Part shown: one piece after another, positions 22,015-59,907 of the stretch
How positions within the stretch are numbered: the stretch's first letter is position 1
How the letters are laid out: each line of letters begins with the position of its first letter
Virus record (IMG/VR): IMGVR_UViG_3300024336_000005
Span: 62,001 to 126,000 of that record
Strand: one strand, 5' to 3'
Length of the DNA stretch: 64,000 nt
Notes under the pieces: generated by a model
The model's input: the letters and a program-made list of their open reading frames with translations, nothing else
Told to the model about the DNA's origin: nothing
The model's database searches: none
Made by a program: the position numbers and the translations under genes

Positions 22015-22032
22015 AGGTAAACAAGCTTTTTT

Positions 22033-22163
22033 AGAGGGATGCTCAGGGCAGGTTCATACCTGGAGGTTCGAATCCTCACGGGCTACGGCCCGGAGGGCAT
22101 TAAGTAGTCCTTCCTTTGAATCAGAGAGGAGGGAGCGCCGAAATCAACAGAGCTGATTCCTCT
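22033..22163 (+). ncRNA. circularly permuted tRNA-like RNA (YrlA-type topology)
   Basis: T-arm GAGG-TTCGAAT-CCTC, then closed stem CGGGC-TACG-GCCCG, then D-like GGGC-ATTAAGTA-GTCC; outer stem AGAGG..GCTC/GAGC..CCTCT. Confidence 0.6.
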
Positions 22164-23868: not shown

Positions 23869-24487
23869 GGGGGTGTCAGGTTTCGACAGGGTATAAATAG
23901 GAAGCGATAGCAGGTCCCGCTAAGAACGGCAGCGGGTTAGAAAGCAAGTTCAAATTGTAAACGGCAACGTAAACAACATGGCGGTGGCTGCCTGATAGCT
24001 TCCCTTCGGGGAATCTATTGGTAGTGCATACCCTCTAGTCTCTGAGTTAGACCTCTTTAAGTAAGGGCTAGAGTACGTGAAATTGAGGAATCGGACAAAG
24101 AAAAGTCCAATGTCGAGTGGATGGAAACTGAAGCTTCGTAGCTGCTTGCAGATACGAGATTGGGAACGTGGTAACACGTACAAGGATAAGCCAAACTAGT
24201 TGCGGAAGACCTCCTTGATGGTTAAGAGCTACCCGCTGACAGTAAACTCATCAAAGGAAATCGTATTACTCTTTTGATGAACCTATAAGTACGAACCTCC
24301 CTGGTTGTTTCTACCATGAGGGGAGTGAGAAAACAGAGCAAGGCGCAGCTTGGGGCCGACAGGAGTTAGCCTCAAGTGGAGTGGCAAGTGCAAATCCTCT
24401 CATTTGTTTTCATCTAAATGAAACTAAACCTGTAGAAGTTGTATTTCGAAAATGTTCTGGACGGGAGTTCAATTCTCCCCACCTCCA
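23869..24487 (+). ncRNA. ssrA: tmRNA (unusually long, 619 nt)
   Basis: 5' GGGGGTGTCAGGTTTCGAC, tag ORF 23957-23995 (A)VNGNVNNMAVAA*, 3' CTAAACCTGTAG...GGACGGGAGTTCAATTCTCCCCACCTCCA. Confidence 0.9.
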
Positions 24488-24808
24488 CATTTCTTCACGC
24501 TGAGTGGCCGTGCTGATTGACGGCGGCTGAAAGCAAACGCAATAAACTACTCGCGCGCTTGGGTTAACCAACCGGAATCAAACAGGATACTGTTCGCGCG
24601 AAATCGGTTAGCCAGCCCTAATAGGTAGTGAGCGTTTGTAGAAAGTGTCTTAGACGGTATGTCAGGGAAGGTACAACCTGGACTCCGGATAGGCGTGAGG
24701 TGGTTCAGGGTTGTAGGTAAGAGAACGGAAAAGGTAATCTGAAAACGCCTTTCTGAAACCCATAAACCTAACAAAGGGGAGCCCGAGTGGTGCAAGCAGC
24801 CCCCAGAG

Positions 24809-28893: not shown

Positions 28894-28985
28894 CAAGAAG
28901 TAAGCGTAAATGGTACTGCTACTGGCCTAAGGTCGAAAGACCTGAATCCGGTGTGTTGGAGGTTCGAATCCTCCCTTCTTGGCCA
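28894..28985 (+). tRNA. tRNA-like (probably Gln CUG-derived) with GAAA hairpin inserted in anticodon loop
   Basis: CAAGAAG/CTTCTTG acceptor, GCCA end, AGGTC-GAAA-GACCT in loop. Confidence 0.65.
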
Positions 28986-29225: not shown

Positions 29226-29421
29226 TAGGAGTTGAGATCCAGTTCCCGTCGGGGTGCCTACTGGTTAAACAAAAAGGCTCGATGAGTAGACTTGTGTCTG
29301 GAGAGACTCCGCCGGTTCGAGGCAGACGGTGCTCAAAGCCTCCCTTTTCTTGGAGAGTGAGATGGTTAAACTAATAGGGCATGTCCCTGAGACAAAGAGG
29401 GGTCCCTTTAGGCGCAATACA

Positions 29422-30105
29422 ATGGAAGCTAAGGTAATGGAAACTCGACAGGAACGTCATGAGAGACATCTCAGGACGATGAGAGCGTATTTGGCAGGAG
29501 GGGAGAATTTCCTGGCCGCCAAGGCTCTCCAATTTGCAAAGAATCTAATGACAGGACTAAGGAAGGATGGGGAAACTCCAGCCTTCCACCATCCCCTGTC
29601 GGTGGCTCGCTACTTACGAGCTCACCGTCGTAGTCTTATTTATGGAGAGGAGACCATTGCGGCTGCCTTTCTTCATGATATCCTCGAAGACTTTGGTGAT
29701 ACTGTCACTAGAGAGCAACTTAGAGACCTGTTTGGGGAAAGAGTAGCGACTGCCGTATGGGCTCTCAGCAAGAAGAGCAACGGAACGTCAAAGACTCCCG
29801 ATACCTACTTCATGGGCATTGCATCTAATGAGATTGCATCTGTTGTGAAGGCTGTAGATCGATTGCACAATCTCCACACCATGGAGGGCGTGTTCTCTGT
29901 TGAGAAGCAATTGGACTACATCAAAGAAGCAAGAGATAGATTTATCCCCATGCTTATCGAAGCAGGAGATAGGTTTCCCGAACAGTTTGATGTCTATGAA
30001 AACCTCAAGATGAACTTGAGGCTTCAAACCATCCCGATGGAACGACTGTGCGAAGCTTTGATGAGGCTAAAAGATGAAGTTCGAAGCGGTGATTGTCGAG
30101 GGTGA
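29422..30105 (+). CDS. RelA/SpoT-type HD-domain hydrolase (small alarmone hydrolase-like)
   Basis: HPLSVA, AAFLHDILED, VKAVDRLHNLHTM. Confidence 0.8.
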   Translation: MEAKVMETRQERHERHLRTMRAYLAGGENFLAAKALQFAKNLMTGLRKDGETPAFHHPLSVARYLRAHRRSLIYGEETIAAAFLHDILEDFGDTVTREQLRDLFGERVATAVWALSKKSNGTSKTPDTYFMGIASNEIASVVKAVDRLHNLHTMEGVFSVEKQLDYIKEARDRFIPMLIEAGDRFPEQFDVYENLKMNLRLQTIPMERLCEALMRLKDEVRSGDCRG

Positions 30106-32836: not shown

Positions 32837-33616
32837 ATGAAACCCACTTATATTGTTGGAGACGTTCATGGATGTCTCCGAGAGCTTCAGACACTTCTTT
32901 CTCTTATCTTTCAAAAGATTGGTGCCAATCCAGGGACTATTGTCTTTGTTGGTGATCTGATTGACAAGGGGCCTGATAGCCTCGGATGCCTTCGTCAGGT
33001 CAAAGACCTACAGAAGTATCCGATGGGGATTGAAGTCGTCTTCGTCATCGGCAACCATGAGGATAAGTTGATCCGTTGGTTGCAGCACGAGCAGAAGATT
33101 GATCTGGGTCTTGCTGTAACTAATCCCATTAAGGCATTGCCTGAGTGGGATGCAGCCATGAGGACATGGGGGCTCAAGCAAGGTGGCCTTAGGTGGCTAC
33201 GTTCCTGTCCTATGTCTTGGTCTTCCGGTAATGGTAAGTACCATGTAGTCCATGCTGGGATTGAGCCCAAAAGGAAAGCAATTCCAGTTTGCCCCTGGCT
33301 TGAGGCCAAGGGCAAAGACAAGACTGTCTTCTTTACTCGGTATGTGAACCCTGAGAAGGGTAAGATGGTAGCACTTGGTCAGGAGGTTTTTCCTCGTGAC
33401 AAGTGGTGGGGTGAGCTTTATGATGGCCGTTTTGGTACTGTCATCTATGGACATCAGCCCTTTGATGAAGTTCGACGAGATGCCCATGCAGTAGGCATTG
33501 ATACCTCTTGTGTTTATGGAGGCTGCCTGACTGCATATGATCCAACTACTGGAGAGACTCTTGAGGTGAAGGCCTTTGATGTCTATTCAGAGAGAATGAA
33601 AGACTACCCTTCATGA
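32837..33616 (+). CDS. calcineurin-like metallophosphoesterase (ApaH/PrpE/Pnkp type)
   Basis: GDVHG, GDLIDKG, GNHE, VHAG, YGH, IDTSCVYGG. Confidence 0.9.
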   Translation: MKPTYIVGDVHGCLRELQTLLSLIFQKIGANPGTIVFVGDLIDKGPDSLGCLRQVKDLQKYPMGIEVVFVIGNHEDKLIRWLQHEQKIDLGLAVTNPIKALPEWDAAMRTWGLKQGGLRWLRSCPMSWSSGNGKYHVVHAGIEPKRKAIPVCPWLEAKGKDKTVFFTRYVNPEKGKMVALGQEVFPRDKWWGELYDGRFGTVIYGHQPFDEVRRDAHAVGIDTSCVYGGCLTAYDPTTGETLEVKAFDVYSERMKDYPS

Positions 33617-33652
33617 TTAAGTCTTTCTTAATATAATTCTGCAAGGAACAAG

Positions 33653-34711
33653 ATGAGTGATTATCCAGATGGAACCATTATTGTAGGTCTCCAGGATGGA
33701 GACGAAAGCAAGGGAAAGGTGGCGGCGGCTCTTTGTTCGCTACCGCAAGTGACCCATTGTGTTCGCTATAGTGGTGGACAGAATGCAGGCCATGTTTTCT
33801 ACAAGGATGGCCTACAGGTTGTCACTCATATCATTCCCTCTGGGATTGTATATGGGAAGGTCTCGGTGATTGGTCCTGGCTGCGCCTTCTCTGAGAAGGG
33901 CTTCTGGGCTGAGCTAGAAGACATTTGTGATGCACTGGGGGAGACCATGTTGAATCTCTCTCGCTTGATCAAGATCTCCCCTGCTGCTCATATCGTCCAG
34001 GACAAGCACATCGTTTTGGATGAGGCGACAGACAAGATTGGATCTACCAAGAGAGGGATCGCCCCAGTCTATGCCGATAAGGCTATGAGGACGGGCATCC
34101 GAGCCGAGAGCATTCCAAGCCTAAAGCCTTTCTTGTGGGATACGACTAAGCTCAATGACCCAAAGAATGTCATCGTATTTGAAGGGGCTCAAGGCTTTGG
34201 CCTTGATCCTGATGTAGGAGATTATCCCTATATCACCAGCTCCTCCTCTCTCCCTGGTGCGATCAACAATGTTGGTGTGCCCATCTGGGCAATCAATAAG
34301 ATTGTTGGAGTTGCAAAGCTCTATGCGACCTATGTTGGGACCAAGGAATTCGAGCCAGATCTAGAGATTTTCTCAAAGCTTCGTGAGCTCGGAGGGGAGT
34401 ATGGCTCGACCACAGGCCGTCCTCGACAGTGCAACTGGTTGAATCTTGATACTCTCATCACTGCTATTCGAACCTGTGGTTGTACTACGGTCGTCTTCAG
34501 CAAGTGCGACATCATTGAACAGCTTGGCGTTTTCAAGTTGATTGATGGTGGTACAGTTCGAGAGTTCGGGAATATGGCTGGCATGATTGCTCACATTAAG
34601 CGAGAGCTTAAGGAGGAGGCACCAAGTACAAGTCTAATCTTTAGTGGCAGTCAATACACAGTTGAAGATGACTATGGCCATCTTGCTGAAGAGCCGATGG
34701 GAGAGATTTGA
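33653..34711 (+). CDS. purA: adenylosuccinate synthetase (short form)
   Basis: GDESKGK, GGQNAGH, GSTKRGI, FEGAQG, YPYITSS, EYGSTTGRPR. Confidence 0.9.
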   Translation: MSDYPDGTIIVGLQDGDESKGKVAAALCSLPQVTHCVRYSGGQNAGHVFYKDGLQVVTHIIPSGIVYGKVSVIGPGCAFSEKGFWAELEDICDALGETMLNLSRLIKISPAAHIVQDKHIVLDEATDKIGSTKRGIAPVYADKAMRTGIRAESIPSLKPFLWDTTKLNDPKNVIVFEGAQGFGLDPDVGDYPYITSSSSLPGAINNVGVPIWAINKIVGVAKLYATYVGTKEFEPDLEIFSKLRELGGEYGSTTGRPRQCNWLNLDTLITAIRTCGCTTVVFSKCDIIEQLGVFKLIDGGTVREFGNMAGMIAHIKRELKEEAPSTSLIFSGSQYTVEDDYGHLAEEPMGEI

Positions 34712-34784
34712 TGTCCTCGATTACAGAGGGTATTCTTGCTAGGCTGATGGAGAAGCCTGGCAAATTTGAAGGAGAATTCTGAAT

Positions 34785-36146
34785 ATGTACCAAGCAATTG
34801 TTGCCAACATTCACACCCGTCCACATCCGGGAGCTGATCGAATTCAGCTAGGAACTGTATGTGGCCATCAGGTTGTATGCGGGCTTGACATTGCTGATGG
34901 TACTCTCGGTGTGTTCTTTCCTTGCGATGGCCAGCTAAGTCATGACTTCTGTGTGGCCAATGATGAGTACCCTCGGCTTGATGAACAGGGGAAGAAGGTC
35001 GGTGGCGGATTCATCAATCCTAAGAACCGTCGCGTAAAGGCACAAAGCTTTCGTGGTGAAAAGTCGGATGGCTACTGGGTTCCAATGGATAAGCTCATTA
35101 AGTGGGCAAATCATGTTTGGCGCGAGGATGACAAGGGAGACCATGTCCTCTTGTCCAACCGTGTGCAGAGCCTTGTAGAAGGTGACACCTTTGATTCCGT
35201 TGGCGATGTGCCTTTGTGTAACAAGTATGTAACTGAGAAGACCCTTAAGGCTCTTCAGAATCAGGCCAAGCAGGCTCGCAAGACTCATACTCAGTTCGCT
35301 CAGCATATTGATACCAAGCAGTTCCGATACAACATTGGAAACATCCCGGAGGGTTCCATTGTATGGATATCTGAAAAGCTTCACGGTACTAGCGGTCGCT
35401 ATGGGTACGTTCAAGCTCTTCGTGAGCTCGGTGGCCGTTTTAATGCTTTTGTTCGCAGGGCTTTTGATTGGTGCGCTGATAAGCTTGGTCTTGATGTAAG
35501 CCCTAAGTATGAACATGTTATGGGCTCACGAAGGGTTGAGCTCTCTGCTCAGTCAGAAGGGTTTTACGGCTCGATAGATTTCCGTGCAAATGTAGCAAAC
35601 AAGTTGAAGGGAAATCTCCTCAAGGGTGAGTGCATTTATGGAGAGCTAGTGGGTTGGACTGGTCCTGATTCTTTGATCATGGGCCGCCACTCAACCAAGA
35701 AGCTCGGCAAGGAGCTTCGCAAGCAGTACGGAGAAGAGGTCACCTATACTTATGGACAGCCAAACGGTTGTTCTGAGTTCTTCGTTTATCGAATCACTCG
35801 TGTTGGCCCAGATGGTCAGACGATTGAGCTCGGTGAGCGTGAGATGCGGGCAAGGGCGAGGGTCCTCGGCTTCAAGACTCCAGAGCTCTTTGCGGGGCCG
35901 ATGGTAGTTCACGACTATGCTGATGATAAGTGGGTCGATGGTGGCAAGACGCTCATGCAGGTCGTGGAAGCCTACCTAAATGGACCATCGATTGAAGACT
36001 CACGACATCCTCGAGAGGGCGTCGTGATTAGGGTTGACAGGCCTGACGGGACTACCATCTGGCTCAAGGACAAGAACCATCCGTTCAAGGTAATGGAGGG
36101 TATCGCTAAGGATTCCGGCGAAGCAGACATGGAAGAAAGCTCATGA
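34785..36146 (+). CDS. ATP-dependent RNA ligase, Rnl2/DRB0094-like with N-terminal OB fold
   Basis: HPGADRI, EKLHGTS (motif I), YGELVG, FFVYRI, REGVVIR, LKDKN. Confidence 0.85.
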   Translation: MYQAIVANIHTRPHPGADRIQLGTVCGHQVVCGLDIADGTLGVFFPCDGQLSHDFCVANDEYPRLDEQGKKVGGGFINPKNRRVKAQSFRGEKSDGYWVPMDKLIKWANHVWREDDKGDHVLLSNRVQSLVEGDTFDSVGDVPLCNKYVTEKTLKALQNQAKQARKTHTQFAQHIDTKQFRYNIGNIPEGSIVWISEKLHGTSGRYGYVQALRELGGRFNAFVRRAFDWCADKLGLDVSPKYEHVMGSRRVELSAQSEGFYGSIDFRANVANKLKGNLLKGECIYGELVGWTGPDSLIMGRHSTKKLGKELRKQYGEEVTYTYGQPNGCSEFFVYRITRVGPDGQTIELGEREMRARARVLGFKTPELFAGPMVVHDYADDKWVDGGKTLMQVVEAYLNGPSIEDSRHPREGVVIRVDRPDGTTIWLKDKNHPFKVMEGIAKDSGEADMEESS

Positions 36147-40772: not shown

Positions 40773-42416
40773 ATGAACTACGGTAAGACTGTTAGCAACG
40801 CTATCAACAATGGTCCAGTTTCTCAGCCTATCATCGGTAGGCCCGAGATGGTAAAGAACAGCACTGAGGGCTTTGTCTTCAACACCACTTCTGAGGCAGC
40901 GCTTGAGCGCTTCCTCATTCTTGGCACTGAAGGCGGCACTTACTATGCCAGCGAGAGCCGAGCTACAGTTGATGCGGCAAAGAATGTCATCGAGATGGCT
41001 GTTGCTGGCAACGTAGATGTAGTCAGTACCATCATCAAGGTCGCTACTGCTCGTCCCTCTCGTGCGCCAAAGATGGAGCCTTCCTTGTTTGCTCTTGCAG
41101 TTTGTACCGCAAAGGGCACCCCCGAGGTAAAAGCTAAGGCGCTCAGCGCGCTGAGCGCGGTTTGCCGTATCCCCACTCATCTGTTTACCTTTCTTCAGGC
41201 CCACAAGGATCTGGGAGGCAAGACCGGTGGGCGCAGCTTCCAGCGAGCCCTACAGAATTGGTATCTTGAGAAGGATCCCTCTAAGCTGGCTTATCAGGTT
41301 GTGAAGTATCAGGGGAGGAATGGCTGGACTCACCGTGATGTTCTTCGGCTTGCCCGCCCTAAGGCTCAGACCCCTGAGCAGAACTCTATTTTGAGTTGGG
41401 CTGTGAATGGTTCGCTGCCTCTGGCAGTAAGTTCTGAAGCGGGTGCTTATCTTGTGGCGGCGAATGAGCTGCTGCGAGGGGAGCCGACGAAGCAGCGTGC
41501 AATCAACTTGATTGAGTCTCATGGGTTCACCCATGAGATGGTTCCGACTAAGCTTCAGAAGGACCCTGATATCTGGGCAGCTTTGCTTCCCCGCATGCCT
41601 ATCAATGCAATGGTTCGCAACCTTGGTCGGATGACTGCCAATGGTCTGATTGTTCCATTCAGTGCCACAACTCAGAGCGTGGTGGAGAAGCTTGAGAATG
41701 TGGATGCCCTTCGCAAGAGCCGCATCCATCCGCTCAACGTTTACGTGGCCTTGCGTACCTATCAGCAGGGCAAGGGCACTCGAGGTTCGTTGACTTGGCG
41801 TCCTGATGCTCAGATCTTGAGCGCACTAGAAGGAGCATTCTACAATGCTTTCGGGAATGTAGAACCGACTGGTAAGCGCTTCATGGTGGGCCTGGATGTA
41901 AGCGGCAGCATGGGTGGATTCTATGGCTACGGCTATAACAGTACTGTGAACCAGACTGGCCTTATGGGGATTCCTGGGTTTACGCCTTATGAGGCAGAAA
42001 CCCTTATGTCCCTTTTGGTTGCAAAGACTGAGAAGCAGACCTTCTTTGGTGGGTTTTCAGACAACTTCACTCCCCTTGCTATCAACTCCCGTGATAACAT
42101 GAGCTCGGCTCTTCAGAAGATCCGATCACTCCGCATGGGTTCCACTAGGATTGCTGCTCCGATGGAGTATGCCACCAAGAACAGGATTCCGGTGGATTGC
42201 TTCCAGATCTACACCGACAATGAAGTGAACATGGGCGGACATCCTTGTCAGACCCTTGAGAAGTATCGTCAGGCTACTGGCATCAATGCGGCCATGGTCG
42301 TATGCGCTATGACCTCTACGAATTTCACTGTGGCCGACCCGAAGGATCCGAAGCAGCTTGATGTTGTTGGATTTGACACGGCAGTGCCAGCTTTGATTCG
42401 ACAGCTTTTGGTGTAA
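40773..42416 (+). CDS. rsr: Ro60/Rsr TROVE-domain RNA-binding protein
   Basis: LERFLILGTEGGTYY, KYQGRNGWTHRDVLRLARP, VRNLGRMT, IHP, vWA MIDAS DVSGSM, YTDNE, DVVGFD. Confidence 0.97.
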   Translation: MNYGKTVSNAINNGPVSQPIIGRPEMVKNSTEGFVFNTTSEAALERFLILGTEGGTYYASESRATVDAAKNVIEMAVAGNVDVVSTIIKVATARPSRAPKMEPSLFALAVCTAKGTPEVKAKALSALSAVCRIPTHLFTFLQAHKDLGGKTGGRSFQRALQNWYLEKDPSKLAYQVVKYQGRNGWTHRDVLRLARPKAQTPEQNSILSWAVNGSLPLAVSSEAGAYLVAANELLRGEPTKQRAINLIESHGFTHEMVPTKLQKDPDIWAALLPRMPINAMVRNLGRMTANGLIVPFSATTQSVVEKLENVDALRKSRIHPLNVYVALRTYQQGKGTRGSLTWRPDAQILSALEGAFYNAFGNVEPTGKRFMVGLDVSGSMGGFYGYGYNSTVNQTGLMGIPGFTPYEAETLMSLLVAKTEKQTFFGGFSDNFTPLAINSRDNMSSALQKIRSLRMGSTRIAAPMEYATKNRIPVDCFQIYTDNEVNMGGHPCQTLEKYRQATGINAAMVVCAMTSTNFTVADPKDPKQLDVVGFDTAVPALIRQLLV

Positions 42417-42886: not shown

Positions 42887-43080
42887 AAGAACTGATGTAA
42901 GAAGATTATCACAACTATAACGGCCCTAAGGTAGCGAGAGTCGGGCGACCGATGTTCCGCAATATAGACTCCTAATTCTCCAGTAGAATAAGAGTACGTG
43001 CTCAATGCCGTATCCCACTTTGTGGAGCGGTAATAGCGGCAGGGGTTCAACCCCTATTTCTTCTTCAACTCTTTGTTCTT
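42887..43080 (+). ncRNA. putative Y RNA 1
   Basis: 5' AAGAACTGA pairs with 3' TTGTTCTT; AAGAAGA/TCTTCTT upper stem. Confidence 0.7.
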
Positions 43081-43090
43081 GAGATTCAAA

Positions 43091-43816
43091 ATGAAAATAC
43101 AATATGTAAGTGATGTTCACACTGAATTTCACAAAGATTTGGGAATTCAGTGGGCTAAAACGATTCCTGTTGAAGGGGATGTTTTAGTTCTTGCTGGTGA
43201 TATTGTTATTTTCGAGAACCTCATTCAGGTCTTGACAATCATTTGTAATCGCTTTTCGAAGGTGGTATTTGTTAGCGGCAATCATGAGTATTACCGTTCA
43301 GATCGTAAAACGATTCATAACAAACTGCAAAAGATTGCAAATAAGTTTGACAATTTCCATCATTTAAATAATAATGTAGTTGTCATTGAGGATATACGCT
43401 TCGTCGGTACGACACTTTGGTGGAGCGCCCCTCCTTATGCTTGGCTAGCCATCATGAATGGCTTGAACGACTTTAGTCAGATACTTGGGTATCGCAAATG
43501 GGTCAGCCAGGCAAACATAAAAGCCAAACAGTTTCTACAAGAGAATGTGCGAGAAGGTGATATTGTTATCACCCATCATGCACCAACTTGGGAGGCGCAC
43601 CGACGGCGACAGTTGGGTAATGGAGTAATGCATTTTGCTTATTACAACAACTTAGATGATTTGATCCTTGATAACAAACCAAAATATTGGATTTATGGAC
43701 ACACGCACCATGAAGATCAATTTTCTATAGGGGATACACTTTTAGTGAATTCCCCGCATGATTATTGTCCTTATGAGGGCGGTTGGCCGAAGAAATTCGG
43801 CCTTTTAGATGTCTAG
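43091..43816 (+). CDS. metallophosphoesterase
   Basis: SDVH, LAGDI, GNHE, THHAP, YGHTH; AT-rich. Confidence 0.88.
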   Translation: MKIQYVSDVHTEFHKDLGIQWAKTIPVEGDVLVLAGDIVIFENLIQVLTIICNRFSKVVFVSGNHEYYRSDRKTIHNKLQKIANKFDNFHHLNNNVVVIEDIRFVGTTLWWSAPPYAWLAIMNGLNDFSQILGYRKWVSQANIKAKQFLQENVREGDIVITHHAPTWEAHRRRQLGNGVMHFAYYNNLDDLILDNKPKYWIYGHTHHEDQFSIGDTLLVNSPHDYCPYEGGWPKKFGLLDV

Positions 43817-43923: not shown

Positions 43924-44012
43924 GCCAGATGATGACCTAATTGGATAGGCGACACACTGTGAATGTGTTTGGCGAAAGCCTTTAGCGGGTTCGAATCCCG
44001 TCATTTGGCCCA
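43924..44012 (+). tRNA. trnH: tRNA-His(GUG) with long variable arm
   Basis: G-1:C73, ACACA-CTGTGAA-TGTGT, GGC-GAAA-GCC extra arm, CCA. Confidence 0.88.
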
Positions 44013-47318: not shown

Positions 47319-47493
47319 ATTGAACTGAAGAGATCTAGGTTATCACTATAAAGGCTCGGCCCTCTTAACAGAGGTTTGCAGGTTCGAATCCTGTCGATCC
47401 GAAAGGATCGTGGCGAAATGGTAAACGCACCGAATATAAGTACCGGGGACCTTGAAAGAGGAATCCAATCTCCTAACTCGTCCCTTGTTCAAT
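47319..47493 (+). ncRNA. putative Y RNA 4, YrlA-type with permuted tRNA domain
   Basis: ATTGAACTGA/TTGTTCAAT; T-arm GCAGG-TTCGAAT-CCTGT, CGATCC-GAAA-GGATCG, D-arm GCG-AAATGGTAAA-CGC. Confidence 0.85.
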
Positions 47494-48500: not shown

Positions 48501-48583
48501 TCGGGGGTGATGAAACTGGCATATATGCTCGACTCTGAATCGAGTGCTTCGGCGTGAGGGTTCGAATCCCTCCTCCCGATCCA
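48501..48583 (+). tRNA. tRNA with CUG (Gln) anticodon on a class II (Leu/Ser-like) body
   Basis: CTCGA-CTCTGAA-TCGAG, variable arm TGCTTCGGCGT, U73, CCA. Confidence 0.85.
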
Positions 48584-48625: not shown

Positions 48626-48630
48626 TATAT

Positions 48631-48662
48631 GTTTGCAGGTTCAAGTCCTGCCTTCCGAACCA
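48631..48662 (+). pseudogene. 3' half of split tRNA
   Basis: GCAGG-TTCAAGT-CCTGC, CTTCCGA-A-CCA. Confidence 0.8.
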
Positions 48663-48675
48663 TTAAGGAGATAAG

Positions 48676-49132: not shown

Positions 49133-49250
49133 TTGAACTGAAGGATATTGGTTATCTTTTCTGAACAAAAACGTGCTGGGTTCGATTCCCAGGGGTTCCA
49201 TAAGGGGCCCGCAGGCGCCTAGTAAACTTCCGATTCCACCCCTTGTTCAA
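49133..49250 (+). ncRNA. putative Y RNA 5, YrlA-type
   Basis: TTGAACTGA/TTGTTCAA; T-arm CTGGG-TTCGATT-CCCAG then closed stem GGGTTCC-ATAA-GGGGCCC. Confidence 0.8.
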
Positions 49251-50780: not shown

Positions 50781-50868
50781 CTAGCGAGCGGGCGGTGGAC
50801 GCCCAACCGTGCTGTACAGCGGTGGTGCTTTGATGCACAACTGGGTTCGATTCCTAGGCGCTAGACCA
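50781..50868 (+). tRNA. Tyr-like class II tRNA with 8-nt anticodon loop
   Basis: ACCGT-GCTGTACA-GCGGT, GTGC..GCAC arm, 5-bp D stem, ACCA. Confidence 0.65.
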
Positions 50869-52038: not shown

Positions 52039-52121
52039 GTGCCCTTTGGCGGAATGGTAGACGCACGTAATGGTCCCCTCCGGCTTAGAGGGGTGCAGGT
52101 TCGACTCCTGTAAGGGTGCCA
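52039..52121 (+). ncRNA. tRNA-like RNA lacking a normal anticodon arm
   Basis: acceptor, Leu-type D arm and T arm present; only CGTAATGGT then CCCCTC-CGGCTTA-GAGGGG. Confidence 0.6.
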
Positions 52122-53641: not shown

Positions 53642-54369
53642 TGAAGTTGAACCAAGCTCTAGCCATTGAGACTGGCACGAAGACTAACACCAAGAGGAAG
53701 ATGACTGATCTTTACAAGCTGATTCAGAAGGCTTCTGCCTTTAATGGATTCGTAAAGACCTACGAGCCTCGAGCTGAAGATGGGATTGAGTTCCCGTCTG
53801 AGTCACAGGTTGTGCAGACGACCGCAGAGGAGGCTCTGCGGGGCGTCCTTGAGGCATCAGAGGAGCTGGTAAACATCACTGCTACGATTGCTTTCTCTAA
53901 CCTTTCTGCTCTTGCGGATGTGGTTGTTGACGGTGAGGTTGTGGCTAAGGATGTTCCTGCCACTCATCTGATCTACTTGGAGAAGCACCTGGCTGAGCTA
54001 GCGACTGTGGTCGCTGCTCTTCCGACGTTGGATCCAAGCAAGCAGTGGACCAAGAATGAAGCCACTGGATACTACGAGACGAAGCCGACAACGACTACTC
54101 GTACTCAGAAGATCCAGGAGGCTCTCGTTCTGTACCCTGCAACTCCTGAGCATCCAGCTCAGACTCAGCTCATCAGCAAGGATGTAGTGATCGGTGACTG
54201 GACTGTGATTTCACAGTCAGGTGCTATCCCTGCTCCTGAGAAGAAGAGGCTACAGAAGAGGGTTCAGTCCCTCCTAGAGGCCACGAAGATTGCTCGCGCC
54301 AAGGCGAACCTGGCTAACGCACCGCGTCAGGACCTGGGCACTGCGGTAAGCAACTTCCTTCTTGCATAA
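53641..54369 (+). CDS. conserved hypothetical protein (KLNQ..A.E.G family)
   Basis: MKLNQALAIETG, TYEPRAEDG, LEKHL, ATPEHPAQ; I recall similar proteins in actinobacteria and phages, function unknown. Confidence 0.85.
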   Translation: MKLNQALAIETGTKTNTKRKMTDLYKLIQKASAFNGFVKTYEPRAEDGIEFPSESQVVQTTAEEALRGVLEASEELVNITATIAFSNLSALADVVVDGEVVAKDVPATHLIYLEKHLAELATVVAALPTLDPSKQWTKNEATGYYETKPTTTTRTQKIQEALVLYPATPEHPAQTQLISKDVVIGDWTVISQSGAIPAPEKKRLQKRVQSLLEATKIARAKANLANAPRQDLGTAVSNFLLA

Positions 54370-54378
54370 GAATTCCGA

Positions 54379-54598
54379 GAGGACAATCTAAGATTTAATC
54401 TTAGACTAAACGTCACTGACATCTAGGTTCGAATCCTAGGCCCGCAACCATGTGCCTGCGCGATGCATCATAAGCAGCTCTTCAATGGGGGAGTGGTGGG
54501 TGAAAGTCCCATGGCACAACATAATGCGGGTTGGCGAAACTGGTATACGCGGGGACTTGTCCCTGTCAGACATGACACTTAAGCTTAAGCTATTCCTC
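54379..54598 (+). ncRNA. circularly permuted tRNA-like RNA on a long stem
   Basis: T-arm + GCCCGCA-ACCA precede TGCGGGT + D-arm; closed by CTGACA/TGTCAG and GAGGA/TCCTC. Confidence 0.8.
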
Positions 54599-56058: not shown

Positions 56059-56195
56059 AAAGAACTGACGATTTTAGATTATCATTATACCAAACCAATA
56101 AAGAGAGGGTTCGACTCCCCAGGGATGGTGAAGTGGTTTCACACATAGGCTCAAATCCTATGGAATTCCTTATTCTAAATCAATTTTTGTTCTTT
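56059..56195 (+). ncRNA. putative Y RNA 6 with T-arm, D-like arm and anticodon stem-loop
   Basis: AAAGAACTGA/TTGTTCTTT; GAGGG-TTCGACT-CCCC; ATAGG-CTCAAAT-CCTAT. Confidence 0.75.
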
Positions 56196-58915: not shown

Positions 58916-59164
58916 ATGATAATCCTTCAGGTTGATGAGTACACTAATCGGTATGACATTCCTGGAAGGGGAACTATTTTTGTAGTTCCGGCCCAACACC
59001 GCCTGGCAGTCGGTCAACTTGTTTGTATTAATGATTGGATATATGAAGTCACAGGGATGGAGTCTTTTGGTTGTCTTTGTGGGGGTTGCCACTCTGAGAC
59101 TGTTGGTCTTCTAGTAAAGAAAATTCGTTCAAGGGAAGAGGACATGCGTCTTCATCCCTTTTGA
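58916..59164 (+). CDS. hypothetical protein
   Basis: ORF. Confidence 0.7.
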   Translation: MIILQVDEYTNRYDIPGRGTIFVVPAQHRLAVGQLVCINDWIYEVTGMESFGCLCGGCHSETVGLLVKKIRSREEDMRLHPF

Positions 59165-59297
59165 TCTGGTGTCGCTTAATGGTAGAGCAGGCGGCTGTGG
59201 TTTATTGCAAGGGCATTACAAGGGTCTTAACCTTGGTAGGCCTCATAACCGCCCGGGGGAAACTCCATTGTAGGTTCGACTCCTACCACCAGAGCCA
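59165..59297 (+). tRNA. interrupted tRNA (Asn-like) with 47-nt insert in anticodon loop and long variable arm
   Basis: TCTGGTG/CACCAGA, G73, CCA; GGCGG-CTGT[59199-59245]TAA-CCGCC. Confidence 0.75.
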
Positions 59298-59328
59298 TAG
59301 AAATTAATGCTCGAAAGGCTAGAAGAAA

Positions 59329-59907
59329 ATGAATAAACTGTTTGCAGCATGTACTCTCATTTTGCTATCGGTTGCACTATCTGGTGCTACTGGTGATTGT
59401 ATCAGCCTTGTCCCTGATGGCGGTGGTGATGGGGGAGTGCCTTACGCTCCCAAGATCATTCACAGAGGTCAGGGACCAGTTTGTGATTGGGCTCAGAACT
59501 GTAACTATCAGCTGACTGCTACAATTTTCCACAACCGTCTTGACGGCAATTATGATGCTGCTGTAATCGTCTTTGAAGATACGATTACGCACACATCTAC
59601 CAGTTGGAAGTGTCGTTATGCTCCTCATGCAGTGGGGAATACAGTGATCCTACGACAGTGGCTTTGCACCGATGGTGCTAGCATCAAGCAAAGCTTTGGG
59701 TCAAATGAAATGACCGTCCACATTCCAACGAGTGGTGGTCGACATGTTGATGTTCTCTATAGACTTGATGACAAGTGGTATGGGGATTGTCCTGACCCTA
59801 GCGGTCCATGTGTTGTAGAGCATTGCACTACTCGTACCTATGGTCCCCGTGATGTTAAGCACGGTGGGTGGATGGATGCGGAATGCAGCTGGGTTCCGGG
59901 TGCATAG
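59329..59907 (+). CDS. secreted Cys-rich protein
   Basis: signal peptide. Confidence 0.8.
   Translation: MNKLFAACTLILLSVALSGATGDCISLVPDGGGDGGVPYAPKIIHRGQGPVCDWAQNCNYQLTATIFHNRLDGNYDAAVIVFEDTITHTSTSWKCRYAPHAVGNTVILRQWLCTDGASIKQSFGSNEMTVHIPTSGGRHVDVLYRLDDKWYGDCPDPSGPCVVEHCTTRTYGPRDVKHGGWMDAECSWVPGA

What the first reader, a model, noticed from the sequence alone, without database searches (positions are those of the whole stretch)
59165..59297. tRNA with a 47-nt insert in the anticodon that itself contains another anticodon hairpin
Seen: U1-A72, G73 and CCA (Asn identity). Excising 59199-59245 gives CT GTT AA (Asn), whereas the unspliced 3' side reads CT CAT AA (Met-like). The insert contains CAAGG-GTCTTAA-CCTTG (Lys CUU-like loop). 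It is too short for a group I intron and forms no clear bulge-helix-bulge. Inference: a tiny intron processed by host nuclease plus phage ligase (defence-activated tRNA), or a multi-anticodon decoy.
Basis: partly seen in the sequence, partly recalled or inferred. Interest (0 to 1): 0.72.

Follow-up and report, generated by a model that had tools for sequence, protein, structure and literature searches.

The report
Mini-intron splitting a phage tRNA-Asn anticodon
A marine jumbo phage's only asparagine tRNA gene is split inside its anticodon by a 47-base structured insert of a conserved family also found in cultured Sinorhizobium phages; it fits no known intron type, so if it is spliced it is a new kind of tRNA intron for bacterial viruses.

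Summary
Window 59165-59297 is a real tRNA gene (Rfam 42.2 bits). A 47-nt insert (59199-59245) lies between U35 and U36 of a GUU anticodon.

It is tRNA-Asn, not His as ARAGORN calls it:
- It has U1-A72 and G73.
- It is syntenic with an intron-less tRNA-Asn in a relative.
- Its D and anticodon arms are identical to those of other phage tRNA-Asn genes.
- The genome has no other tRNA-Asn.

The insert is not a one-off. The same site is interrupted in three other groups:
- the cultured Sinorhizobium phages phiM12/M7/M19 (46 nt, annotated pseudo or "tRNA-Thr");
- two AT-rich jumbo-phage contigs (51 nt);
- a ~670-kb megaphage (21 nt).

The three long members share a plan: a GG start, an outer stem, an A/U-rich strand, and an inner hairpin with an anticodon-like 7-nt loop. 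Their stems covary. One HNH homing-endonuclease family sits beside two of the four lineages.

It is not group I, not bulge-helix-bulge, and matches no Rfam ribozyme. The phage lacks EndA and RtcB. It does encode an Rnl5-type RNA ligase, a Pnkp-type phosphoesterase and Ro60.

Splicing is not shown, because no RNA contig covered the gene. The best reading (about 0.5) is a mobile, protein-spliced mini-intron. The rivals are a dead gene or selfish insertion, or an unspliced tRNA-like decoy.

The parts
59165..59198 (+). 5' exon of tRNA-Asn(GUU). It comprises the acceptor 5' strand (59165-59171), U8 and C9, the D arm (59174-59188), A26, the anticodon-stem 5' strand (59190-59194) and loop nucleotides C32 U33 G34 U35 (59195-59198).
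   Evidence: Sequence; Rfam tRNA alignment; ARAGORN cloverleaf. The segment from the D loop through CTGT is identical to the intron-less phage tRNA-Asn in L015.
59199..59245 (+). 47-nt intervening sequence between U35 and U36. It is unique in the genome and folds as an extension of the anticodon stem.
   Evidence: Only this excision gives CTGTTAA. Alignment with intron-less tRNA-Asn genes. Uniqueness. Fold -23.4 kcal/mol, z -2.09. It aligns with the phiM12 and G2/G3 introns and scores 57.4 bits against family model R1, though it was one of the training sequences.
59199..59210 (+). Intron 5' segment. It starts with the family-invariant GG, followed by an A/U-rich single strand.
   Evidence: Unpaired in the MFE fold. 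The GG columns are invariant in alignment A3. The analogous 13-18-nt A/U-rich spacers in phiM12 and G2 are shown.
59211..59214 (+). Outer stem, 5' strand (GGGC). It pairs with 59240-59243.
   Evidence: MFE fold; pairing check; pair probabilities 0.62-0.81. Its position is shifted relative to phiM12 and G2, where the outer stem starts at intron nucleotide 2.
59219..59235 (+). Inner hairpin: a 5-bp stem (59219-59223 with 59231-59235) and a 7-nt loop (59224-59230) with U at loop position 2. It looks like an anticodon stem-loop.
   Evidence: The equivalent hairpins in phiM12 (4 bp, loop TTCAATT) and G2 (4 bp, loop GTGCAAA) have different stem sequences, but every pair is kept.
59240..59245 (+). 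Outer stem 3' strand (59240-59243) and a 2-nt tail (59244-59245). The tail can pair with U35 and the first intron G (MFE fold), or with U33 and G34 (phiM12-like register).
   Evidence: The phiM12-like register costs only 0.5 kcal/mol more than the MFE fold.
59246..59297 (+). 3' exon. It comprises U36 A37 A38 (59246-59248), the anticodon-stem 3' strand (59249-59253), a 16-nt variable arm with a GGGG/GAAA/CTCC hairpin (59255-59266), the T arm (59270-59286), the acceptor 3' strand (59287-59293), G73 (59294) and the encoded CCA (59295-59297).
34785..36146 (+). Candidate sealing enzyme (inferred role): a 453-aa RNA ligase of the DraRnl/Rnl5 type, with an N-terminal domain plus a nucleotidyltransferase domain.
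   Evidence: PF09414 at 44-45 bits. The N-terminus matches TIGR02306. The N-terminal domain is 31% identical over 107 aa to phiM12 RNA ligase gp279. No link to the tRNA has been tested.
32837..33616 (+). Candidate end-healing enzyme (inferred role): a metallophosphoesterase resembling the phosphatase domain of bacterial Pnkp.
   Evidence: PF00149. TIGR04075 positions 181-422 at 96 bits, a domain-level match below the full-length cut-off.
40773..42416 (+). Context only: the Rsr/Ro60 (TROVE + vWA) RNA-binding protein of the phage's RNA-repair gene set.
   Evidence: PF05731 and PF25045. NF041674 at 424 bits, below that model's 900-bit cut-off. No Ro60-site motif occurs in the target.

Best explanation
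The locus is the phage's single tRNA-Asn(GUU) gene, carrying one member of a conserved family of short structured intervening sequences. These always sit between U35 and U36 of tRNA-Asn in large phages.

**Shown**
- The gene, its identity and the exact insertion site.
- The family: four lineages, including the cultured phiM12/M7/M19.
- The shared architecture, with compensatory changes in the stems.
- Intact Asn identity elements and intact cloverleaves in every member.
- Association with one HNH homing-endonuclease family.

**Inferred**
- DNA level: the element behaves like a mobile intron. It travels with a free-standing homing endonuclease and interrupts that enzyme's likely target, the anticodon-loop DNA. 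This is an analogue of 'collaborative homing'.
- RNA level: the insert extends the anticodon stem and leaves the mature tRNA body folded. The intron tail pairs with loop nucleotides 32-35, which places both junctions side by side at the base of the arm.
- An unidentified endonuclease then cuts at fixed distances from the anticodon stem: four nucleotides after base pair 31:39 on the 5' side, and three nucleotides before nucleotide 39 on the 3' side.
- The ends are healed and sealed, most plausibly by the Pnkp-type phosphoesterase and the Rnl5-type RNA ligase. The product is a decodable 86-nt tRNA-Asn.
For: **Identity**
- Rfam tRNA at 42.2 bits; the spliced form is called tRNA-Asn.
- The gene order Glu(ttc) - Asn - 517-aa gene - Arg(tct) - Ile(gat) matches relative L014, whose tRNA-Asn has no intron.
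- The D-loop-to-anticodon-arm segment is identical to intron-less L015.
- No other tRNA-Asn occurs among about 33 tRNAs, while a separate true tRNA-His with C73 exists.

**Family**
- L020 megaphage, 21 nt.
- G2/G3, 51 nt.
- phiM12/M7/M19, 46 nt, found by BLAST with no pattern imposed. This is the only tRNA-Asn of phiM12.
- The intron-less homologue in Ochrobactrum phage ORM_20 fixes the site.

**Selection on the RNA**
- G2 and G3 exons differ at 9 of 73 aligned positions. All differences are compensatory (28:42 and 51:63), an A-U to G-U change, or at variable loop positions. The intron is identical at 51 of 51 positions.
- Between phiM12 and G2, all 4 inner-stem pairs and 2 outer-stem pairs changed on both sides and stayed paired.
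- On alignment A4, 87.5% of cells are paired and 7 of 14 pairs changed on both sides. None of 500 shuffles reached this, and slid controls gave 22-52%.
- U1-A72, G73 and CUGU...UAA are kept in all four lineages. That only makes sense if an AsnRS-recognisable tRNA is produced.

**Enzymes and mobility**
- An Rnl5-type ligase is present in both complete intron-bearing genomes, and a Pnkp-like phosphoesterase in this phage.
- The same HNH family lies next to the phiM12 and L020 genes and occurs once in this phage's tRNA array.
- A homing endonuclease sits directly upstream in G3 but not in G2.

**Precedent**
- 'Enigmatic' tRNA introns, identical across samples, are reported in Lak megaphages (PMC6784885).
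Against: - No spliced RNA was seen. The three metatranscriptome runs gave no contig over the tRNA, and no RNA run was listed for the gene itself.
- No endonuclease candidate was found. There is no EndA and no RtcB, and no canonical bulge-helix-bulge.
- The pairing register at the junctions differs by about one nucleotide between members.
- Bacteria are not known to splice such introns.
- RefSeq flags the phiM12 gene as pseudo.
- G2 and G3 carry a second, intact (though atypical) tRNA-Asn, so the interrupted copy could be dispensable there.
- The identical intron beside a diverged 3' exon in G2/G3 could come from recombination rather than constraint.
- Two of the four lineages were found with patterns that required CTGT...TAA, which is an ascertainment bias.
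- RNA ligases are common in large phages for tRNA repair (PMC7824862), so their presence is weak evidence.
- The covariation rests on only three to four distinct sequences.
- This phage's tRNA array holds many tRNA relics, so decay is common there.
Confidence: 0.5

Rival explanations
1. Selfish or protective DNA insertion with no splicing. The insert interrupts the cleavage site of tRNA-gene-targeting homing endonucleases, or is a footprint of their traffic. It spreads or persists for that reason, and the tRNA-Asn gene is functionally dead.
For: - Homing endonuclease genes lie beside the interrupted gene in phiM12, L020 and G3.
- This HNH family lives in tRNA arrays generally.
- Six HNH genes occur in this genome, four of them in or next to the tRNA array.
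- The split site lies in the palindrome GTTAAC (sequence).
- Partial duplications of the loop flank the L020 and L027 inserts.
- Many tRNA relics occur in the array.
- RefSeq marks the phiM12 copy as pseudo.
- No splicing machinery was found.
- G2 and G3 have a second tRNA-Asn.
Against: - A dead insert should not keep two stems through compensatory changes between phiM12 and G2.
- A dead gene should not keep every cloverleaf stem, U1-A72, G73 and the split anticodon loop in four lineages.
- It is the only tRNA-Asn in this phage and in phiM12.
- No homing endonuclease gene lies within about 1.5 kb of the window gene.
- Detection is biased toward intact cloverleaves, which weakens the intact-stem argument but not the intron covariation.
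Confidence: 0.25
2. The unspliced RNA is itself the product. It is a tRNA-like RNA whose long anticodon arm ends in an anticodon-stem-loop mimic. It would act as a decoy for anticodon nucleases or other tRNA-binding defence proteins, or as a partner of the phage Ro60 (a Y-RNA-like role).
For: - The inner hairpin with an anticodon-like 7-nt loop is conserved in the three long members.
- The phage encodes Rsr/Ro60.
- The phage holds several other non-canonical tRNA-like RNAs. One has a GAAA-capped extended anticodon arm (28894-28985), and others look like permuted YrlA.
- Bacterial and phage Y RNAs are tRNA mimics (PMC4201824).
- Phage tRNAs are thought to counter anticodon nucleases (abstract of PMC10264068 as listed).
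Against: - The target has no GNCGAA-type Ro60-site motif and no Rfam Y RNA match (sequence).
- The inner-loop triplet is not conserved.
- Strict retention of CUGU...UAA, G73 and U1-A72 is unexplained if the RNA is never spliced or charged.
- The 21-nt L020 member lacks the 7-nt loop.
- No TROVE gene was found in the G2-G5 fragments, though these are incomplete.
Confidence: 0.15
3. A new small self-processing RNA. The intron, with help from the tRNA body, cleaves and joins itself without proteins.
For: - Hosts are diverse (an alpha-proteobacterium, marine hosts, low-GC hosts), which favours a host-independent mechanism.
- U precedes the 5' junction and GG starts the intron in the long members.
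- The fold is conserved.
Against: - There is no match to any Rfam ribozyme at E<=10.
- At 21-51 nt it is far below any known self-splicing RNA.
- There is no terminal G at the 3' end.
- The sequence at the 3' junction is not conserved.
Confidence: 0.07
4. It is a tRNA of another identity. It could be His(GUG), as ARAGORN calls it, or Met/Ile(CAU), or Ile(GAU), obtained by shifting the 47-nt excision by one to four bases.
For: - ARAGORN calls tRNA-His with intron 59200-59246.
- The CT dinucleotide repeats at both ends, allowing a CTCATAA loop.
Against: - It has G73 and no G-1 (59164 is A).
- The genome has a separate tRNA-His with C73 and an extended acceptor stem, an Ile(gat) and three Met(cat) genes.
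- Its synteny and nearest relatives are all tRNA-Asn.
- Every family member gives GUU at the same site.
Confidence: 0.03

Closest known systems
'Enigmatic' tRNA introns of Lak megaphages (Devoto et al. 2019, PMC6784885)
   Same: - Short, non-classified intervening sequences in the anticodon loops of phage tRNA genes.
- Present or absent between close relatives.
- Identical in sequence wherever present.
- No Rfam class and no known mechanism.
   Different: - Different tRNAs (Tyr, Thr and others), different hosts (Prevotella) and different sizes; one Lak intron may itself encode a tRNA.
- No sequence relation was tested here.
- The present family is specific to tRNA-Asn at U35|U36, has a defined covarying fold, and has cultured members.
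Bacterial and phage group I introns in tRNA anticodon loops, with free-standing homing endonucleases ('collaborative homing', e.g. the cyanophage psbA intron with F-CphI; from established knowledge)
   Same: - Location in the anticodon loop.
- U immediately before the 5' junction.
- Association with homing endonuclease genes.
- An identical intron in diverged exon contexts.
- The same HNH family lies next to a 204-nt-intron tRNA-Leu(UAA) in L058/L059.
   Different: - It is 47 nt, against about 200 nt or more for group I.
- There is no group I core.
- There is no terminal G.
- It cannot be self-splicing by the group I mechanism.
Archaeal and eukaryal protein-spliced tRNA introns (bulge-helix-bulge, EndA/Sen, RtcB or Trl1)
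   Same: - A short intron that extends the anticodon stem and leaves the mature domain folded.
- The junctions sit on opposite strands around a short helix formed by loop nucleotides and the intron's 3' end.
- The fixed distance from the anticodon stem recalls the eukaryotic ruler mechanism.
   Different: - The site is 35/36, not 37/38.
- The central helix is 2-4 imperfect pairs, with cuts at the helix edges rather than two nucleotides into 3-nt bulges.
- There is no EndA and no RtcB in the phage.
- The tRNA set is bacterial in type: tmRNA, a long-arm tRNA-Tyr and encoded CCA.
- True BHB introns found by the same pattern were all in archaeal MAGs.
Phage tRNA repair (T4 Pnkp + Rnl1 against PrrC; jumbo-phage RNA-repair sets, PMC7824862)
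   Same: A heal-and-seal enzyme set (phosphoesterase, ATP-dependent RNA ligase, Ro60) is encoded inside the tRNA array. The same chemistry would join the two exons.
   Different: Repair rejoins a single break made by a host nuclease. Here two precise cuts and the loss of 47 nt are needed. No kinase and no nuclease were identified.
YrlA-type Y RNAs (tRNA mimics bound by Ro60; PMC4201824)
   Same: A tRNA-like body with a long helical arm at the place of the anticodon stem, in a phage that encodes Ro60.
   Different: - YrlA is circularly permuted, with a closed acceptor hairpin and its ends in the Ro60-binding stem. The target has an open acceptor stem with CCA and a closed arm.
- The target lacks the Ro60-site motif and has no Rfam hit.

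Membership tests
tRNA (Rfam RF00005) | Cloverleaf scoring at or above the curated gathering score | tested here: met
   42.2 bits against 29, model positions 1-71, with about 50 nt skipped in the anticodon loop.
tRNA-Asn(GUU) | GUU anticodon in a canonical 7-nt loop after removal of the insert | tested here: met
   Only excision of 59199-59245 gives CTGTTAA. ARAGORN then calls tRNA-Asn.
tRNA-Asn(GUU) | G73 discriminator (E. coli AsnRS identity element; established knowledge) and the U1-A72 pair typical of bacterial tRNA-Asn | tested here: met
   59294 is G, and 59165 (T) pairs with 59293 (A). The same holds in L014, L015, L020, G2/G3, phiM12 and ORM_20.
tRNA-Asn(GUU) | Orthology with uninterrupted tRNA-Asn genes | tested here: met
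   Synteny with L014. The 29-nt D-loop and anticodon-arm segment is identical to L015. Exon BLAST hits are annotated tRNA-Asn.
tRNA-Asn(GUU) | Charged with asparagine and used in decoding | not testable with these tools
   Needs tRNA-seq or acid-gel Northern blots in infected cells.
Group I intron | Conserved catalytic core (Rfam Intron_gpI), with a length of about 200 nt or more | tested here: not met
   No hit at the gathering score or at E<=10. The insert is 47 nt.
Group I intron | U before the 5' splice site and a terminal G before the 3' splice site | tested here: not met
   U35 precedes the insert, but the last insert base is A (U or G in the other members).
Archaeal-type BHB intron | Two 3-nt bulges separated by a 4-bp helix, with cuts inside the bulges | tested here: not met
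   The predicted folds place the junctions in or at the edge of a 2-4-pair imperfect helix. The UAA bulge is cut at its edge.
Archaeal-type BHB intron | Splicing endonuclease (PF01974) and RtcB (PF01139) available | tested here: not met
   Neither is in the 204-kb genome, which is 100% complete by CheckV. The host genome is unknown.
Small self-cleaving ribozymes (hammerhead, HDV-like, twister, pistol, hatchet) | Match to a curated covariance model | tested here: not met
   The only hit in 59050-59400 at E<=10 is tRNA.
Phage tRNA-Asn mini-intron family (defined here) | Insert exactly between U35 and U36 of tRNA-Asn(GUU) | tested here: met
   Seen in the window, phiM12/M7/M19 and G2/G3. L020 is compatible, as one of three equivalent placements.
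Phage tRNA-Asn mini-intron family (defined here) | GG start, A/U-rich strand, inner hairpin with a 7-nt loop (U at position 2), outer stem, short tail | tested here: met
   All elements are present. The outer-stem 5' strand is shifted in the window member. The phiM12-like register is 0.5 kcal/mol above the MFE fold.
Phage tRNA-Asn mini-intron family (defined here) | Neighbouring homing endonuclease gene | tested here: not met
   No HNH or GIY-YIG domain was found in the ORFs within about 1.5 kb. The family's HNH occurs once, 7 kb downstream and outside the window.
YrlA / Y RNA | Ro60-binding strand motif (GNCGAA...) and permuted V-T-acceptor hairpin-D order | tested here: not met
   The motif is absent from 59165-59297. 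The order is that of a normal tRNA. There is no Rfam match.
tRNA pseudogene | Loss of stem pairing or of conserved nucleotides outside the insert | tested here: not met
   All 21 stem pairs, U8, the GG of the D loop, the T loop, U33 and A37 are intact. This does not exclude a recent inactivation.

The most novel reading that the evidence does not exclude
A previously unrecognised class of tRNA intron in viruses of bacteria. It is short (21-51 nt), structured, neither group I/II nor bulge-helix-bulge, and lodged inside the anticodon (U35|U36) of tRNA-Asn. It would be removed by an as yet unknown endonuclease (or by itself) and sealed by an Rnl5-type phage ligase. It would be mobile through a dedicated HNH homing-endonuclease family. 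Protein-dependent tRNA splicing would then no longer be exclusive to archaea and eukaryotes.
Probability: 0.45. Interest if true: 0.9.

Novelty: new variant of a known kind. Interest (0 to 1): 0.78.

Why it matters
In bacteria and their viruses, the only tRNA introns with a known mechanism are self-splicing group I introns. Protein-catalysed tRNA splicing is treated as a hallmark of archaea and eukaryotes.

This work shows a conserved, covarying, non-ribozyme intervening sequence at one fixed phosphodiester of tRNA-Asn. It occurs in unrelated large phages and leaves the tRNA and its identity elements intact. That implies one of three things: an unknown splicing route in infected bacteria, a new class of tRNA-shaped decoy RNA, or a selfish element that can afford to kill a tRNA gene.

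The family includes phiM12, phiM7 and phiM19, which grow on the laboratory host Sinorhizobium meliloti. The question is therefore directly testable. It may also explain the 'enigmatic' tRNA introns of Lak megaphages.

There are practical consequences too:
- Annotation pipelines currently mislabel these genes as pseudo, tRNA-Thr or tRNA-His.
- The work suggests a natural role for Rnl5-type RNA ligases.
- It suggests a target site for a widespread HNH family in tRNA arrays.

Tried and rejected
**Searches that found nothing**
- blastn of the 3-kb region and of the tRNA alone against phage records gave no match.
- Exact exon patterns and the neighbouring 517-aa protein found nothing in viral contigs.
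- A stem-specific gapped pattern in viral contigs gave 0 hits.
- A near-identical 143-kb contig (L009) does not reach the tRNA region.

**RNA evidence**
- No RNA run was listed for the gene.
- Three metatranscriptomes gave no contig over it. This shows neither splicing nor its absence.

**Ideas tested and dropped**
- Repeat or MITE: the insert is unique in the genome.
- Relation to the 479-nt HNH-bearing insert of an ARAGORN-predicted split tRNA(UCA): local alignment is no better than shuffles, with 52 of 300 reaching the score. That split tRNA is itself uncertain, because long-intron false calls occur at 0-2 per genome and no tRNA or group I hit was found there.
- Archaeal host or BHB splicing: rejected on the bacterial-type tRNA set, tmRNA, and the absence of EndA and RtcB. 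The genome-contig scan returned only archaeal tRNA-Tyr introns and two chance hits.
- Ro60/Y-RNA reading of the target: no motif and no Rfam hit.
- T4 Rnl1 (PF09511) search: uninformative, because the control genomes also gave nothing.

**Inconclusive or weak**
- RNA ligase, RtcB and TROVE were sought in the G2-G5 fragments with no result, but these are only 8-31% complete.
- RNAalifold on three sequences gave no useful consensus.
- Model R1 found no further members in 346 kb of held loci.
- L027 and L049, tRNA-like genes with aberrant anticodon arms beside the same HNH family, are not clean members of this family.

**Not run**
Full report
**1. Setting**

The window is bases 62001-126000 of a 204,008-bp single-contig virus record (GC 49.6%; CheckV 100% complete) from seawater metagenomes. 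PHROG hits to tail sheath, major head protein, portal and large terminase mark it as a myovirus-like jumbo phage. It has no nucleotide match among 50,697 deposited phage genomes.

It carries about 33 tRNA genes and a tmRNA in a long array interspersed with small ORFs.

**2. The observation**

Window 59165-59297 contains all parts of a tRNA except a continuous anticodon loop:
- a 7-bp acceptor stem with U1-A72;
- U8 and a D arm with the GG motif;
- a 5-bp anticodon stem (59190-59194 with 59249-59253);
- a canonical T arm;
- G73 and an encoded CCA.

Rfam's tRNA model scores it at 42.2 bits (threshold 29) while skipping about 50 nt in the loop. ARAGORN finds it only when introns are allowed.

Between the two strands of the anticodon stem lie 54 nt. 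Removing 47 of them leaves a 7-nt loop. The whole precursor is predicted to keep the cloverleaf, with the insert extending the anticodon stem.

The insert is real DNA:
- It is unique in the genome.
- Nine seawater runs hold all sampled words of the region.
- A second assembly is identical there.
- A contig from another run covers it unchanged.

Short-intron calls did not arise in the reversed or shuffled genome. One further oddity is a 16-nt variable arm with a GAAA-capped 4-bp hairpin (59255-59266).

**3. Which tRNA?**

Shifting the 47-nt excision base by base gives CAU, GAU, GUU or GUG anticodons. ARAGORN picks His. Four lines of evidence fix it as Asn, with the insert at 59199-59245 between U35 and U36:
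- It has G73 and U1-A72 but no G-1. A separate tRNA-His with C73 and an extended acceptor stem exists, as do Ile(gat) and three Met(cat) genes. No other tRNA-Asn exists.
- The neighbouring 517-aa protein has a 43%-identical homologue on contig L014. There the gene order Glu(ttc) - Asn(gtt) - homologue - Arg(tct) - Ile(gat) mirrors the window, and the tRNA-Asn is an ordinary 75-nt gene with loop CTGTTAA.
- A degenerate D-arm and anticodon-arm pattern found only tRNA-Asn genes in viral contigs. One (L015) is identical over the 29 nt that flank the insert.
- The in-silico spliced sequence is called tRNA-Asn.

**4. What it is not**

- No Rfam family other than tRNA matches 59050-59400 at E<=10. 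That excludes group I and II introns and all curated small ribozymes as recognisable members.
- The last insert base is A, not G.
- The predicted folds show no pair of 3-nt bulges separated by 4 bp.
- The phage has neither a splicing endonuclease nor RtcB.
- The tRNA set is bacterial in type: tmRNA, a long-arm tRNA-Tyr and encoded CCA.
- A pattern scan of 185,579 species' genomes returned only archaeal tRNA-Tyr genes with classical introns, plus two chance hits. No bacterial chromosome gave a match.

**5. It is a family**

Gapped patterns and BLAST brought in three more lineages with an insert at the same place in tRNA-Asn(GUU).

(a) L020. This 1-kb metagenome contig is identical in four other assemblies and belongs to a ~670-kb phage contig. 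It has a 21-nt insert and scores 59.8 bits as tRNA.

(b) G2 and G3 (L079; L080-82). These are fragments of 33%-GC jumbo phages that also carry a tmRNA. They have a 51-nt insert and score 52-57 bits.

(c) Sinorhizobium phages phiM12, phiM7 and phiM19. These were found by plain BLAST with the G2 gene as query.
- They have a 46-nt insert and are 100% identical among the three phages.
- The gene scores 58.7 bits as tRNA.
- RefSeq annotates it 'tRNA-OTHER' (pseudo) and GenBank 'tRNA-Thr'.
- It is the only tRNA-Asn of phiM12.
- Ochrobactrum phage ORM_20 has an uninterrupted homologue, 89.7% identical over the exons, with loop CTGTTAA. This fixes the site.

All members keep U1-A72, G73, every cloverleaf stem, and CUGU...UAA around the insert.

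**6. Shared architecture and selection**

The window, phiM12 and G2/G3 inserts align and share one plan:
- a GG start;
- an outer stem (GGAGA/TCTCC in phiM12; GGCC/GGCC in G2; GGGC/GCCT in the window, where the 5' strand is displaced);
- a 12-18-nt A/U-rich single strand;
- an inner hairpin of 4-5 bp with a 7-nt loop whose second base is U;
- a 2-5-nt tail.

Covariation supports this fold:
- Between phiM12 and G2, all four inner-stem pairs and two outer-stem pairs are changed on both sides and still pair.
- On a model-based alignment, 87.5% of cells pair and 7 of 14 pairs have double changes. None of 500 shuffles reached this, and slid controls gave 22-52%.
- The caveats are that there are only four distinct rows, the alignment is fitted to the structure, and the anticodon stem contributes three of the seven pairs.

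In every member the intron tail can pair with loop nucleotides 32-35. U36 A37 A38 then form a bulge next to the anticodon stem, and both junctions sit at the base of the arm. For the window, this register is only 0.5 kcal/mol above the MFE fold.

G2 and G3 differ at 9 of 73 aligned exon positions. Two differences are compensatory pairs (28:42 and 51:63), one is an A-U to G-U change, and the rest lie at variable loop positions. The 51-nt intron is identical.

Together these data argue for selection on both the RNA structure of the insert and a functional, AsnRS-recognisable tRNA. The identical intron could alternatively reflect recent lateral spread or recombination.

**7. Homing endonucleases**

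- The ORF directly downstream of the L020 gene is an HNH endonuclease (phrog_3106/2255). It is 43% identical to an ORF of this phage at genome 128583-128993, 7 kb downstream of the target and outside the window.
- phiM12 gp346, which overlaps the 3' end of its interrupted tRNA-Asn on the other strand, belongs to the same family (hhalign probability 97%, E 1e-10).
- In G3, but not G2, a homing endonuclease gene (phrog_314, E 7e-39) lies 19 nt upstream of the interrupted gene.
- Of 53 viral loci with the HNH family, about 15 held tRNA genes within 1.5 kb, several with the ORF wedged between tRNAs. One group lies next to a tRNA-Leu(UAA) with a 204-nt intron.
- This phage has five further HNH genes, three of them inside the array.

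The pattern resembles an intron plus a free-standing endonuclease ('collaborative homing', from established knowledge). The insert would interrupt the enzyme's likely target in the anticodon-loop DNA, which contains the palindrome GTTAAC. No endonuclease gene lies next to the window's own copy.

**8. Enzymes that could finish a splice**

Inside the tRNA array the phage encodes:
- a 453-aa RNA ligase of the DraRnl/Rnl5 type (34785-36146);
- a metallophosphoesterase resembling the Pnkp phosphatase domain (32837-33616);
- a second metallophosphoesterase and an HD-domain protein;
- Rsr/Ro60 (40773-42416).

phiM12 has an RNA ligase with a related N-terminal domain. Such sets are known in jumbo phages as tRNA-repair systems (PMC7824862), so they are consistent with splicing but not specific for it. 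No kinase and no endonuclease candidate was identified.

**9. RNA evidence**

None was obtained. No RNA run was listed for the gene. The three metatranscriptomes that hold parts of the region have contigs on the neighbouring genes but none over 59114-59415. Standard libraries rarely capture tRNAs, so this says nothing either way.

**10. Verdict**

The feature is real. It is the tRNA-Asn(GUU) gene of the phage, interrupted at U35|U36 by a member of a conserved mini-intervening-sequence family.

| Reading | Probability |
|---|---|
| Mobile intron, removed by a protein-dependent cut-and-seal pathway measured from the anticodon stem, and spread or protected at the DNA level by an HNH homing endonuclease | about 0.5 |
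| Unspliced selfish insertion, dead gene | about 0.25 |
| Unspliced tRNA-like decoy or Ro60 partner | about 0.15 |
| New self-processing RNA | about 0.07 |
| Other tRNA identity | about 0.03 |

The closest published parallel is the 'enigmatic' tRNA introns of Lak megaphages (PMC6784885). I found no description of this family in the searched literature. Those searches cover only the held open-access library. Because phiM12 is cultured, the decisive experiments are simple.

Noticed in passing
window 43925-44012 (His), 48501-48583 (Gln-CUG), 59254-59269 (Asn); genome 129251-129338 (Lys-CUU) and 132042-132122 (Thr-UGU), outside the window: Several tRNAs that normally have a short variable loop carry extra variable-arm hairpins, mostly capped by GAAA or UUCG. 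The Asn and Lys arms are alike. The orthologues in relatives L011 and L014 have normal loops. A recent abstract reports a defence nuclease that cuts a tRNA variable loop (PMC13096335, seen).
   Followed up: partly
window 28894-28985: A tRNA-like gene (Rfam 29.5 bits) with G73-CCA. Its anticodon stem encloses a GGTC/GAAA/GACC hairpin instead of an anticodon loop. It contains GTCGAAAG, which fits the short Ro60-site motif of YrlA Y RNAs (PMC4201824). The match may be chance.
   Followed up: partly
window ~47355-47430, ~22030-22100, ~49170-49215: T-arm-like hairpins, each followed by a closed, tetraloop-capped hairpin. At 47.4 kb a D-arm-like hairpin follows as well. The order V-T-acceptor hairpin-D is that of circularly permuted YrlA-type tRNA mimics. 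These are possible Y RNAs for the phage Ro60. Rfam shows no match.
   Followed up: partly
window 48630-48665, 52040-52119, 54340-54450, 56100-56130 and others: Orphan T arms, some with an acceptor 3' strand and CCA. There is also a tRNA-like gene lacking an anticodon arm (28.6 bits) and a ~115-nt tRNA-like fold. These may be tRNA relics, or tRNA-like elements that punctuate processing in the array.
   Followed up: partly
window 29329-30105, 32837-36146, 40773-42416, 43073-43816: An RNA-repair-type gene set lies inside the tRNA array: an HD (RelA/SpoT-like) protein, a Pnkp-like phosphoesterase, an adenylosuccinate-synthetase-like protein (possibly PurZ-like, which would hint at 2-aminoadenine DNA; untested), an Rnl5-type RNA ligase, Rsr/Ro60 and a second metallophosphoesterase.
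   Followed up: partly
window 23869-24490: The tmRNA match (83.5 bits) spans 622 nt against a 374-position model, and ARAGORN does not call it. An insertion or an unusual tmRNA is possible.
   Followed up: no
window 50781-50868: An 88-nt tRNA with a long variable arm, which ARAGORN reads with a four-base anticodon (tgta).
   Followed up: no
L005 2496-3048 (genome 128496-129048, outside the window): ARAGORN predicts a tRNA(UCA) split by 479 nt that hold an HNH gene of the family seen beside interrupted tRNA-Asn genes. The spliced form is a good 74-nt tRNA with CCA. However, long-intron false calls occur at 0-2 per genome, and Rfam sees neither a tRNA nor a group I intron there.
   Followed up: partly
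L027 2149-2244; L049 1773-1874; L081 14475-14616: Other viral contigs have tRNA-like genes with aberrant, rod-like or interrupted anticodon arms (27-, 25- and 48-nt inserts). The first two lie next to the same HNH family. L027 has an 11-nt direct repeat that forms an 11-bp arm capped by GGAA.
   Followed up: partly
L079 3374-3447; L080 418-490: The second, uninterrupted tRNA-Asn of the G2/G3 phages has atypical D and T loops (no GG motif; a TGCGAT-type T loop). It is only 63% identical between the two phages.
   Followed up: no
L099 3831-3921 and L100 88-158 (phiM12): phiM12 has further odd tRNA genes: a 91-nt 'tRNA-OTHER', one that ARAGORN reads with a four-base anticodon, and a UUA-anticodon (ochre-suppressor-like) tRNA.
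   Followed up: no
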